Assembly: GCF_016433145.1 (NCBI RefSeq)
Contig: NC_058136.1
Span: forward strand, 70,953,779-71,017,778
Origin: Gracilinanus agilis
Lineage: Eukaryota
Length of the DNA stretch: 64,000 nt
Reading direction: 5' to 3'
How positions within the stretch are numbered: position 1 is the stretch's first letter; every line of letters starts with the position of its first letter. Made by a program: the position numbers and the translations under genes. Under the pieces are notes generated by a model. The model was given only the letters and a program-made list of their open reading frames with translations, was not told where the DNA came from and searched no databases. This document shows, piece by piece, positions 18,101 to 21,100 of the stretch.

Positions 18101-21100
18101 TGACATCTGGCACAGGGACACCTGCCAAAATCATAACTGCTGTCCCAAAAATCGCTACTGGCCATGGGCAGCAAGGAGTAACCCAGGTAAAACACACCTG
18201 CCGTACCATTGGCATCATCCTACGTCAGCTAGTCTGTTGCCTTCTCTCCCTGCCCTTTGAGAATATCTCGAAGCCACTTGTGCCTTTCTTGGGGCATCCT
18301 GAGCCATTTGCCAGGAGTTGCTCAGCCCTCTGATCTTTGGGATTGCAGGTGGTGCTAAAAGGAGCCCCTGGACAACCAGGCACCATCCTCCGAACAGTTC
18401 CCATGGGTGGGGTGCGGCTTGTCACCCCAGTCACAGTATCAGCTGTCAAACCAACAGTCACCACCCTTGTGGTGAAGGGCACCACAGGTATGTGTCTGAC
18501 AGATGGGTGGAGCGATTGGCTGGCCTCTGCATTCTCTTAATCTAATCATCAGGAGGAAACAGGGGAGAATGGCATGAAGGCATGGGATGACCAAGCTAGC
18601 CTCCCTGGAGGGTACTGTTAAGCCCATTCTTCTGATAGTGTGCCTTTATATTGGACCTGCTTTCTTTTGGGAGCTTCTCAGTGTGTTTGCTGTTGCCTCC
18701 TCCCCCAGGGGATTTTTTTCCCCCTTAAAACTTTCTATTCCTTCCGGTCTTGGAAATGGTCCTATCTCATCTTGTTTCCCCTCCCCTCCAGGAGTTACAA
18801 CTCTTGGCACTGTGACAGGCACAGTGTCTACCAGCCTTGCTGGAGCAGGCGGGCATAACACCAATGCCTCTCTGGCCACTCCTATCACCACCCTGGGGAC
18901 CATTGCCACTCTTTCGAGCCAGGTGATCAATCCTACAGCCATTACTGTGTCAGCTGCCCAGACCACTCTGACAGCGGCAGGAGGGCTCACCACCCCGACC
19001 ATTACCATGCAGGTAGGCCCTTCCTCCACTGCCACCCACCCAAACAGGAAGGGATAATAAGATCACCGCAGTACGGTTGCATGGTGAGCAGGCCAGGCTG
19101 GGGGGATGAGGGGTGGGGTCGTGAGGAGAGCTGAGTTCTCACTTAATAACCCTGGGCGAATCTCTGGGTCTTAACTTCCTTTTGAATTCTCTCCCATCTG
19201 CCCTCATGTGGTAACACTAAGCAGGGTGAGGGGAGATACCCAGTGCCGCCTGTTGTATAAGATTTTCAACATTCCACTAGCAAATGGGAGCTGATCTCCT
19301 GGATTGGGGGTGGGTGGGAGGAACAGCTGACGTGTGTTTGTAGAAGTGGCTTCCTTCCTTCCTCCCTGTCTCTTTCCCCACTCCCCAATACCTTCCTGGA
19401 CTTTAGGAATGGGATTCTCAAATTAGTCTGAAGGGCCAGGGTTGGCTTTAACACAACCCCCTCCATCACTATACCCTAGCTGCTGCCACCACCGCAGCAC
19501 ATCAGCACTGTGCAAACCCAGGGCCATCCTCACAGAAACTTAGAAGACTGGCCTGGCCTCAGAACTGAGCCAAGATGGAGAGAATTTGGGAGGATGGGAA
19601 GAGAAGGGCCCAGTGAGGGAGAAGAGACTTGATGGATAGGGGGTTTCTACTTCTGTTTTTTCCTAGCCTGTCTCTCAGCCCACTCAAGTGACGTTGATTA
19701 CCACACCCAGTGGAGTAGAGGCCCAGCCAGTGCATGACCTTCCCGTCTCCATCTTGGCCTCACCTACAACTGAGCAGCCCACAGCCACAGTCACAATCGC
19801 TGAATCAGGCCAGGGTGATGTGCAGCCCGGCACTGTGACCCTAGTGTGCTCCAACCCCCCCTGCGAGACCCATGAGACGGGCACTACTAATACGGCCACT
19901 ACGACCGTAGTAGCAAACCTAGGCAGCCTCCAGCAGCCAACCCAAGTCCAGTTTGTCTGTGACAGGCAAGAGGCAGGTGCCTCGTTGGTGACCTCAGCAG
20001 TGGGACAGCAGAATGGCAGCGTGGTGCGGGTCTGTTCAAACCCCCCCTGTGAGATCCATGAGACAGGCACCACCAATACTCCCACTGTGGTCAGTGCCAA
20101 CCTCACGGTCCCCGCACTGCTAGGGGCAGGGCAGTTTGTGTGCTCCAACCCTCCCTGTGAGACCCATGAGACAGGCACCACCAACACAGCCACTTCTAGT
20201 ATGGCTGGGCAGCACATGTACTCCATCCCCTCATGCCTGCCCCAAGAAACAGGTACCACCAATCTAGCTACATCAAGCATTGCTGGGCAGCAAGTCTGCT
20301 CCAATCCCCCATGTGAAACCCATGAAACGGGTACCACCAACACAGCCACCATGGCCACATCCAACATGATCGGGCAGCGTGTGTGTACAAACCCCCCATG
20401 TGAGACCCATGAGACAGGAACCACCAGCACTGCCACTACTGCCATGTCCAACATGGGTTCAGGGCAGCCAGCAACTGCCAGCCAGCAACGTGAGACATAT
20501 CACACTCACACAACCAATACCCCCACCACAGCCCGATCTAATATGGGCACTAGGGAGCCTGAGAGACCACAGGTTCTTGCCAAGCCCCCATGCCAAACTC
20601 ATCAGACCAGCGCAACCGGTACCACCATGACTGTGAGAGCTACAGAGGCACCATGTCCAGCTGCTCCTCGGGTCTGCCCCAGTCCTCCCTGTGAGCAAAG
20701 TACCGCTGCCACAGGTTCTATGGGCCCCGTGACTAAGAGCAGCTCAGCTAGTGGGAGTGGTACCAGCACAGGCGTAGGGCAACTAGCCTTCATCAGCCGG
20801 CAGTCTGAGGTACAGCATACCCATACAACAAACACCCCAACTACAGCCCGGTCCAACATGGGCGCTGGGGAGGCCAATGGGGTACAGGGGCCCACCAAGC
20901 CCTCATGCCAAACACATCAAACCAGTTCCACCAGCACCACTATGACTGTGAAAGCCACAGAGGTGCACTGCCTGGCCGCTGCCACCGCCGTCTCCTCCAC
21001 CTGTTCCAACCCACCCTGTGAAACGCACGAGACTGGTACCACCAACACAGCCACTACCTCGAATGCAGGCACTCTCCAGCAGGTGTGCTCCAACCCACCC

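What the first reader, a model, noticed from the sequence alone, without database searches (positions are those of the whole stretch)
20501..20863. Twin 16-aa Thr-rich motif in HCF-1 with 10 synonymous and 0 non-synonymous differences
Seen: [16 protein letters not shown] occurs at 20501-20548 and 20816-20863, exactly 315 nt apart. The protein is identical but 10 of 16 codons differ at silent sites (cac/cat, act/acc, cac/cat, acc/aca, aat/aac, ccc/cca, acc/act, cga/cgg, tct/tcc, aat/aac), so this is an old duplicate under strong purifying selection. Each copy is followed 90 nt later by CQTHQTSxTxTTMTV (20591, 20906), defining a 105-aa higher-order unit. Known: the Thr-rich C-terminal half of a PRO repeat binds the OGT TPR domain, while the CSNPPCE half carries the cleavage glutamate. 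As I recall, the equivalent human segments are degenerate. Inference: a selected binding-only or glycosylation-only OGT module without a cleavage site, kept in this lineage and eroded in eutherians.
Basis: partly seen in the sequence, partly recalled or inferred. Interest (0 to 1): 0.75.

Follow-up and report, generated by a model that had tools for sequence, protein, structure and literature searches.

The report
Twin decayed HCF-1 cleavage repeats
Two identical 16-residue threonine-rich motifs in an opossum HCFC1 gene are the conserved enzyme-docking halves of two decayed HCF-1 cleavage repeats; one copy is kept in nearly all amniotes (not just marsupials), and both still carry the glutamate at which the enzyme OGT normally cuts.

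Summary
[16 protein letters not shown] occurs at 20501-20548 and 20816-20863, 315 nt apart, with 10 synonymous and 0 non-synonymous differences. Each copy is followed 90 nt later by a CQTHQT..TTMTV unit.

The window is the large PRO-repeat exon of HCFC1 (19667-21455) of Gracilinanus agilis. Each motif is the Thr-rich half (positions 13-28) of a decayed HCF-1PRO repeat of an old "TTARS" subtype. Frogs still carry this subtype as full canonical repeats.

- Both copies are kept in all 12 marsupial species examined. Their A/B-specific silent differences are shared across six marsupial genomes, so the duplicate is old and unconverted.
- Copy B is not marsupial-specific. It is kept in most eutherians (identical in bats and horse) and in lepidosaurs and turtles, and is decayed only in catarrhine primates.
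- Copy A alone is eroded in eutherians, and it is also eroding in possum and wallaby.
- Both copies keep a Glu exactly at repeat position 10 (173 of 176 instances across amniotes). They lost the CSNPPC part, not the cleavage glutamate.

Most likely function, by inference only: an OGT TPR-docking site. It may also be a weak non-canonical cleavage site. This is a new variant of a known element, of moderate interest.

The parts
19667..21455 (+). Large HCFC1 exon that encodes the whole HCF-1PRO repeat region. It holds 8 canonical repeats plus the decayed ones.
   Evidence: The frame is open from 19667 to 21490. The acceptor AG is at 19665-19666 and the donor GT at 21456-21457. Hits are to HCF-1 proteins and to PDB peptides 4N3A-C. 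The open frame (1824 nt, 19667-21490) is 1824/1824 nt identical to the Gracilinanus agilis locus L001.
20375..20452 (+). Canonical PRO repeat (VCTNPPCE...) immediately upstream of copy A.
   Evidence: (reference copy of family D1).
20465..20548 (+). Copy A, a decayed TTARS-type PRO repeat, positions 1-28. Glu10 is at 20492-20494 and the 16-mer [16 protein letters not shown] at 20501-20548. Positions 4-9 (CSNPPC) are replaced by TASQQR.
   Evidence: At DNA level it lies in register with the canonical 90-nt repeats (family D1, 20462-20551, 60%), with CGT-GAG aligned to TGT-GAG. It is conserved in 12 marsupial species.
20549..20590 (+). 14-codon linker A. It evolves fast.
   Evidence: pN is 0.39 against linker B. 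There are 8 non-synonymous changes among 5 marsupials.
20591..20635 (+). Decayed repeat of the CQTHQT..TTMTV type (Gln at positions 10 and 13), unit A.
   Evidence: Omega is about 0.15 in marsupials. It is present in eutherians as CQTRQT..TTMTV.
20666..20725 (+). Third, strongly decayed PRO-derived element of unit A. VCPSPPCE is kept, with Glu at 20693-20695, but the Thr-rich half is lost.
   Evidence: (family D5, 20669-20695). It occupies the place that a canonical repeat holds in unit B (in-register comparison).
20780..20863 (+). Copy B, a decayed TTARS-type PRO repeat, positions 1-28. Glu10 is at 20807-20809 and the 16-mer at 20816-20863.
   Evidence: Positions 13-25 are invariant in 12 marsupial species. 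It is kept in most eutherians and in sauropsids.
20864..20905 (+). 14-codon linker B.
20906..20950 (+). CQTHQT..TTMTV-type decayed repeat, unit B.
   Evidence: It is eroded in Boreoeutheria and kept as C-E-S-H-Q-T in Afrotheria.
20993..21070 (+). Canonical PRO repeat that closes unit B. It is the counterpart of 20666-20725 in unit A.
21077..21244 (+). Third higher-order unit: a canonical repeat (21077-21154), a 15-codon linker, then CETHQT..TTMTV (21200-21244).
   Evidence: (family D3, spacing 315 then 294).

Best explanation
The twin motif is the Thr-rich half (repeat positions 13-28) of two decayed HCF-1PRO repeats in the HCFC1 gene of the opossum Gracilinanus agilis.

Both belong to an ancient repeat subtype whose tail reads T-[PA]-T-T-A-R-S. 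In tetrapods this subtype is always followed, about 14 residues later, by a second decayed repeat of the form C-[EQ]-T-x-Q-T..T-T-M-x-V. Frogs still have 3-4 such pairs with a full canonical first member.

In the amniote ancestor one of these first members lost C4-C9 and changed E13 and G15 to His (the "HTH" form). It kept Glu10, T14, T16, T17, N18, T19, T21, T22, A23, S25 and M27-G28. That unit is copy B and is kept in nearly all amniotes.

Before the marsupial-eutherian split, a 105-residue block (HTH unit, linker, TMTV unit, spacer with a third PRO unit) was duplicated, or its first member was converted. This gave copy A. Marsupials kept copy A and eutherians let it decay.

Mechanism (inferred, not shown). 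The conserved residues are those that, in the solved OGT:HCF-1PRO complexes, thread through the OGT TPR lumen. Each HTH unit therefore most likely works as an extra OGT docking site inside the PRO-repeat array. It would raise local OGT occupancy and multivalent binding, while being a poor or null cleavage site because P7, P8 and C9 are gone.
For: Identity:
- The exon hits HCF-1 and the PDB peptides 4N3A-C.
- Copy A aligns in register with canonical repeats at DNA level (family D1).

Age and absence of gene conversion:
- Synonymous sites between A and B are saturated.
- Orthologous copies cluster: A-A 4.6, B-B 1.5 and A-B 10.5 differences per 48 nt. Four third-position A/B differences are fixed in six marsupial genomes.
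- Eutherians carry a positional relic of copy A that still shows N18-T19-P20 and R24.

Conservation:
- Both copies are in 12 marsupial species of 5 orders.
- Copy B is in Afrotheria, bats, carnivores, ungulates, whales, rodents, colugo, lepidosaurs, tuatara and a tortoise.
- Among 46 distinct copy-B 28-mers, 44 have E10, 44 T14, 44 T16, 43 T17, 44 N18, 44 T19, 43 T21, 43 R24 and 43 S25.
- The Glu codon is GAG in mammals and GAA in Sceloporus, so the constraint is on the residue.

Ancestry: frog HCF-1 has full VCSNPPCE...TTARSNIG repeats, each followed by a CET.QT unit.

Function, from papers:
- The Thr-rich region T14-T24 binds the TPR domain, through five conserved TPR asparagines (Kapuria 2016, PMC4840301); these contacts go to the peptide backbone (Hammel 2024, PMC11440498).
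- The T17-22A mutant has reduced binding (Bhuiyan 2015, PMC4549301).
- Side chains of H12 and E13 are dispensable.
- Multi-repeat fragments bind OGT with picomolar affinity.
Against: - No binding, glycosylation or cleavage was tested here, so the function is inference from sequence.
- G15H, A20P and T24R change three of the eleven Thr-rich positions. Their effect on TPR binding is unknown. P20 also occurs in canonical repeats of frogs and deer.
- A pure docking site should not need Glu10. E10 weakens binding to OGT (Bhuiyan 2015), yet it is almost invariant.
- His13 and His15, invariant for more than 300 million years, are not explained by OGT docking.
- Within marsupials the constraint is moderate: omega about 0.3 for A and 0.25 for B, on few changes. 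Copy A is decaying in Trichosurus and Notamacropus.
- Catarrhine primates do without an intact copy.
Confidence: 0.6

Rival explanations
1. The HTH units are natural non-canonical OGT substrates. The Thr-rich half docks in the TPR domain and presents the conserved Glu10 (in an R-E or S-E context; L-E in eutherians, C-E in reptiles) to the active site. There it is glycosylated and the chain is cut slowly. The opossum protein would then have up to two more cleavage sites than the eight canonical ones.
For: - Glu is at position 10 in 173 of 176 instances, and always exactly three residues before T14.
- Kapuria 2018 (PMC6240873) showed that Glu10 plus the Thr-rich region in correct register is enough for OGT cleavage of a foreign CK2 sequence. 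The same paper states that natural sites of this kind "remain to be found".
- H12A and E13A do not affect cleavage.
- Reptiles even keep C9-E10.
Against: - P7, P8 and C9, which define the cleavage region in alanine scans (Bhuiyan 2015), are all replaced.
- Only six cleavage sites have been reported in human HCF-1. However, the catarrhine copy has lost Glu10, so human data may not bear on this.
- No cleavage data exist for any HTH unit.
Confidence: 0.2
2. One reading: a binding-only or glycosylation-only OGT module that lacks the cleavage glutamate, is kept specifically in marsupials and is eroded in eutherians.
For: - Copy A is indeed intact only in marsupials.
- The CSNPPC half is absent from both copies.
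- The primate counterpart is decayed.
Against: - Copy B is as intact in many eutherians and in reptiles.
- Glu10 is present in both copies and nearly universal.
Confidence: 0.08
3. The conservation reflects a function unrelated to OGT docking. Possibilities are a binding site for another partner, a His-dependent (metal or pH) switch using the invariant H13 and H15 (H12 too in many species), or a cluster of modified Thr/Ser residues.
For: - H13 and H15 replace E13 and G15 and are then nearly invariant (41 and 40 of 46). OGT docking does not require this.
- R24 is also invariant, whereas canonical repeats have T or M there.
Against: - The residues shared with canonical repeats are the TPR-contacting ones.
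- The unit sits inside the PRO-repeat array, in register with it.
- No other partner is known for this segment. No paper in the searchable library contains the motif strings.
Confidence: 0.1
4. The identity of the two copies is due to recent gene conversion or to chance, in a neutrally decaying relic.
For: Tandem repeat arrays often undergo conversion. Within-marsupial omega is near the exon average.
Against: - There are ten silent and no replacement differences.
- A- and B-specific silent states are shared by six marsupial genomes.
- Copy B is conserved across amniotes.
Confidence: 0.02

Closest known systems
Canonical HCF-1PRO repeat (26 residues; six in human HCF-1; peptide in PDB 4N39-4N3C)
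   Same: - Same gene, same exon, and in register with the array.
- Glu at position 10, followed by a three-residue linker.
- Thr-rich region: T14, T16, T17, N18, T19, T21, T22 and A23 are identical, as are S25 and N26 and the M-G tail.
- 12 of 17 (copy A) or 11 of 17 (copy B) identities over positions 10-26 to the window's own canonical repeat. That repeat matches 4N3C chain B at 23 of 24 residues.
   Different: - C4-S5-N6-P7-P8-C9 is absent (copy A TASQQR, copy B ISRQS-type).
- Changes E13H, G15H, A20P and T24R.
- Cleavage is not known.
Engineered CK2(Glu10)-Thr-rich chimera of Kapuria et al. 2018 (PMC6240873)
   Same: A non-HCF cleavage-site context joined to a PRO-type Thr-rich region, with Glu exactly at position 10. 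The chimera is cleaved by OGT.
   Different: The chimera is artificial and uses an unaltered Thr-rich region. The twin motif is natural, with three substitutions in that region.
Uncleavable PRO repeats used as OGT binders or inhibitors (E10Q/E10A/E10S; HCF3R-AAA of Hammel et al. 2024, PMC11440498)
   Same: The idea of a PRO-derived element that docks in the TPR domain without being cut. Multivalent arrays bind very tightly.
   Different: Those lose Glu10 and keep CSNPPC. The twin motif does the reverse.
The decayed HCF repeats of the C-[EQ]-T-H-Q-T..T-T-M-x-V type. As I recall, these are the two repeats that UniProt marks 'degenerate' in human HCF-1 (from memory, not checked here).
   Same: PRO-derived, non-consensus, and conserved across tetrapods. 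They are the constant downstream partner of the TTARS-type units.
   Different: They keep P8-C9 and often Q10. Their Thr-rich half follows a different pattern.

Membership tests
HCF-1PRO repeat (OGT cleavage signal) | Lies in the central region of a vertebrate HCF-1, within the single large repeat exon | tested here: met
HCF-1PRO repeat (OGT cleavage signal) | Cleavage region P7-P8-C9-E10 (Bhuiyan 2015; Kapuria 2016) | tested here: not met
   Only E10 is present. Positions 7-9 are Q-Q-R in copy A and R-Q-S in copy B.
HCF-1PRO repeat (OGT cleavage signal) | Glu at position 10, three residues before T14 | tested here: met
   GAG at 20492-20494 and 20807-20809. Glu in 173 of 176 instances across amniotes.
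HCF-1PRO repeat (OGT cleavage signal) | Thr-rich region T14-T24 | tested here: met
   8 of 11 positions are identical to the consensus and all six threonines are kept. The changes are G15H, A20P and T24R.
HCF-1PRO repeat (OGT cleavage signal) | Binds the OGT TPR domain and is cleaved by OGT with UDP-GlcNAc | not testable with these tools
   Needs a biochemical assay.
TTARS-type PRO repeat plus TMxV-type repeat pair (higher-order unit defined here) | Tail T-[PA]-T-T-A-R-S, followed after about 14 residues by C-[EQ]-T-x-Q-T..T-T-M | tested here: met
   Window, both copies. Frogs, lizards, tuatara, tortoise and Afrotheria.

The most novel reading that the evidence does not exclude
The HTH-type unit is the first natural non-canonical OGT glutamate substrate. 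It is a TPR-docking Thr-rich segment that presents a conserved Glu10, in a context unrelated to CSNPPC, for glutamate glycosylation and slow backbone cleavage. It is present once in most amniotes and twice in marsupials. It would have been overlooked because catarrhine primates, and hence the human protein used in all biochemical work, have lost the Glu and most of the threonines.
Probability: 0.2. Interest if true: 0.7.

Novelty: new variant of a known kind. Interest (0 to 1): 0.42.

Why it matters
OGT cleavage of HCF-1 is the only known proteolysis by a glycosyltransferase, and its substrate rules come almost wholly from the six canonical human repeats. Here is a repeat variant conserved for more than 300 million years. 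It keeps exactly the two elements shown experimentally to be sufficient, Glu10 and the Thr-rich region in register, and has discarded the rest.

It offers a natural test of two questions. Does that minimal rule operate in vivo? Do uncleaved docking units tune OGT occupancy on HCF-1?

It also shows that the PRO array is built from an ancient three-part higher-order unit. And it shows that human HCF-1 is atypical at this site, which matters when mouse and human results are compared.

Tried and rejected
- Pfam scan of the exon: no family covers PRO repeats. There was only a sub-threshold match of the CSNPPC segment to a conotoxin precursor model, which I take as chance.
- Word search with the 601-residue exon: the length filter limited it to ORF fragments. 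I therefore used the large representative search only to obtain a full-length HCF-1 id (frog, P0030). Two region-restricted word searches followed.
- No monotreme, bird or crocodile entry was among the listed hits, so the duplication could not be dated with those outgroups.
- The look-up of encoding contigs failed for two non-longest isoforms. Longest isoforms taken from the listing of cluster members worked.
- L001 turned out to be the same assembly as the window, so it is not independent support.
- The paper search for the motif strings found nothing. The Lazarus 2013 paper was not held.
- Reads. The look-up of sequencing runs listed holders.
I derived the coordinates from earlier outputs instead.
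- I did not open the human entries P0137-P0139, nor P0008 (a possibly human ORF fragment). I built no spliced gene model. Primate statements rest on gibbon, gorilla, chimpanzee, baboon and snub-nosed monkey.
- Rejected readings: recent gene conversion, a chance match, and a constraint at the nucleotide level. The differences are all silent, and the copy-specific states are shared across species.
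Full report
**1. Observation**

The two 48-nt stretches, 20501-20548 and 20816-20863, both translate to [16 protein letters not shown]. They start 315 nt apart.

Nei-Gojobori counting gives 10 differences over 12.7 synonymous sites (pS 0.79, saturated) and none over 35.3 non-synonymous sites. 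The adjoining 14-codon linkers have pN 0.39. Ten random changes would all be silent with a probability near 2e-6 (my arithmetic).

Each motif is followed 90 nt later by a CQTHQT..TTMTV unit, at 20591 and 20906. A third unit of the same build follows: a canonical repeat at 21077-21154, then CETHQT..TTMTV at 21200-21244.

**2. What and where**

- The frame is open from 19667 to 21490. A splice acceptor sits at 19665-19666 and a donor at 21456-21457.
- The product matches HCF-1 proteins and the HCF-1 peptides co-crystallised with OGT, 4N3A-C.
- The open frame (19667-21490) is 1824/1824 nt identical to a locus of the Gracilinanus agilis assembly GCA_016433145.1. The window is therefore this didelphid opossum.
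- The exon carries eight canonical PRO repeats.

**3. Anatomy in PRO-repeat numbering**

Copy A aligns in register with the canonical 90-nt repeats at DNA level (family D1). Its CGT-GAG lies on the canonical TGT-GAG, that is C9-E10.

Numbered this way, both copies read E10-x-x-H13-T14-H15-T16-T17-N18-T19-P20-T21-T22-A23-R24-S25-N26-M-G.

- Kept: Glu10 (GAG at 20492-20494 and 20807-20809), all six threonines of the Thr-rich region, and N18, A23, S25, N26.
- Changed: E13H, G15H, A20P and T24R.
- Lost: C4-S5-N6-P7-P8-C9.

The CSNPPC part is missing, not the Glu.

**4. Distribution among relatives**

The exon alone reached only ORF fragments because of the length filter. I used the representative search to get a full-length HCF-1 id (frog, P0030). 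Two region-restricted word searches then gave about 240 vertebrate HCF-1 entries. Cluster members added Monodelphis.

- Marsupials. Both copies are present in all 12 species, from Didelphimorphia, Dasyuromorphia, Peramelemorphia, Microbiotheria and Diprotodontia. Glu10 is present in both copies everywhere. Copy B positions 13-25 are invariant.
- Eutherians, copy B. It is kept as R-Q-L-E-x-[HQ][10 protein letters not shown][AV]RS.MG in Afrotheria, bats, carnivores, ungulates, pangolin, colugo and (as HTYTT) rodents. Pteropus, Rhynchonycteris and Equus are identical over the 16-mer to copy B of most Australidelphian marsupials.
- Catarrhine primates. A 5-residue gap in the alignment removes L-E-x-x-H, and four threonines are lost, leaving GR-HSHAVNTAAMTRSS.G.
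- Eutherians, copy A. It is eroded in every eutherian. The relic still shows N18-T19-P20 and R24.
- Sauropsids. Lepidosaurs and tuatara have one unit, C-E-S-H-HTHTTNTATTARSLMG. A tortoise has R-P-C-E-A-H-Q-THTT.., next to a full canonical repeat with the same TTARSLMG tail.
- Frogs. They have 3-4 full canonical repeats with a T-[PA]-T-T-A-R-S-N-I-G tail, each followed by a C-E-T-x-Q-T unit.

Over 223 entries of at least 1200 residues, 176 HTH-type instances were found. Glu is at position 10 in 173 of them. The three exceptions are Old World monkeys, and only marsupials have two instances. Isoforms inflate these counts. Among 46 distinct copy-B 28-mers the figure is 44 of 46.

**5. Age, conversion and selection at DNA level**

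I fetched HCFC1 loci of koala, monito del monte, antechinus, brushtail possum and tammar wallaby. I also fetched an elephant shrew, a bat and a fence lizard.

- Orthologous copies cluster. Differences per 48 nt are A-A 4.6, B-B 1.5 and A-B 10.5. Four third-position A/B differences are fixed in all six marsupials. The duplicate therefore predates the marsupial crown and has not been homogenised since.
- The eutherian relic of copy A puts the duplication (or conversion) before the therian split. The shared H13/H15 puts it after the HTH form arose in the amniote stem. Both datings are inference.
- Parsimony counts on a five-species marsupial tree:

| Segment | Synonymous | Non-synonymous | Omega (approx.) |
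|---|---|---|---|
| Copy A 16-mer | 7 | 6 | 0.31 |
| Copy B 16-mer | 3 | 2 | 0.25 |
| Eight canonical cores | 35 | 2 | 0.019 |
| Whole exon | – | – | 0.225 |

- All six non-synonymous changes in copy A are in Trichosurus and Notamacropus. Both in copy B are N/T at position 26.
- Purifying selection is thus clear for the core of copy B, and for copy A outside Diprotodontia. It is much weaker than on canonical repeats. The perfect twin identity seen in this window holds only in Gracilinanus and the dasyurids.

**6. Likely mechanism**

Established from papers:
- The Thr-rich region T14-T24 binds the OGT TPR domain, contacting five conserved TPR asparagines, and positions P7-E10 in the active site (PMC4840301); the asparagine contacts go to the peptide backbone (PMC11440498).
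- T17-22A has reduced binding. E10 itself disfavours binding. T11-E13 matter little (PMC4549301).
- H12A and E13A do not affect cleavage.
- Glu10 plus the Thr-rich region, in exact register, suffice for cleavage of a foreign CK2 sequence. The authors state that other natural sites of this kind remain to be found (PMC6240873).
- Multi-repeat fragments bind OGT at picomolar affinity (PMC11440498).

Inference. The HTH units keep the TPR-contacting residues, so they most probably dock OGT (about 0.6). Having lost P7, P8 and C9, they are probably poor cleavage sites. The near-universal retention of Glu10 in register is not explained by docking alone. It leaves open a weak non-canonical cleavage or glutamate-glycosylation site (about 0.2). 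The invariant H13, H15 and R24 are unexplained.

**7. Comparison with the known, and novelty**

The PRO repeats, their bipartite build and the existence of degenerate copies are known. I found no description of a deeply conserved variant that keeps Glu10 and the Thr-rich half but not CSNPPC. I also found none of the TTARS-unit plus TMxV-unit higher-order organisation. No paper in the searchable library holds the motif strings; that library is incomplete. I rate it a new variant of a known kind.

**8. Limits**

- There is no functional test.
- There are no monotreme, bird or crocodile sequences.
- Codon counts are small.
Nothing of those places was sent to a search tool afterwards.
- Human entries P0137-P0139 and the possibly human fragment P0008 were left unopened.

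Noticed in passing
window 19838-21439: There are eight canonical PRO repeats with C-E at positions 9-10 in this opossum and in most marsupials (7 in Notamacropus). The same regular expression counts 6-7 in the full-length eutherians sampled, 8-10 in frogs and 13-18 in turtles. Adding the two HTH units, VCPSPPCE (20666-20725) and CETHQT (21200-21244) gives 12 PRO-derived units that carry Glu10.
   Followed up: partly
window 20024-20209, against protein P0108: The annotated Gracilinanus protein (2117 aa) lacks about 87 residues, including two canonical repeats, that are in the uninterrupted open frame of the exon. This is either a model artefact or an intra-exonic splice.
   Followed up: no
window 20666-20725: This decayed repeat keeps V-C-P-S-P-P-C-E but has lost the Thr-rich half. 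It is the mirror image of the twin motif. It sits where unit B has a full canonical repeat.
   Followed up: partly
P0145, P0146, P0172 (Afrotheria), aligned with window 20906-20950: The second TMTV-type unit is C-E-S-H-Q-T (Glu10) in Afrotheria, C-Q-T-H-Q-T in marsupials, and eroded to Y-E-S-S.. in Boreoeutheria.
   Followed up: no
P0075 (Gopherus) residues 1129-1330: Seven 29-residue canonical repeats lie in perfect tandem and are nearly identical. This suggests recent expansion or homogenisation of the array in turtles.
   Followed up: no
L002 (Phascolarctos), about 20975: The frame shifts by one base between copy A and copy B in the koala assembly, which fits its 'LOW QUALITY PROTEIN' label. 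It is probably an assembly error.
   Followed up: no
L005 (Trichosurus) and L006 (Notamacropus): Trichosurus has 12 fewer residues than the other marsupials between copy A and copy B. Notamacropus has lost one canonical repeat upstream of copy A. In both species copy A carries several replacements.
   Followed up: partly
window 21300-21395 (ORF residues 538-570): A sub-threshold Pfam match (20.2 bits against a cut-off of 21.6) of the segment around the last CSNPPC to the alpha-conotoxin precursor model. I take it as a chance resemblance of a Cys/Pro-rich string.
   Followed up: no
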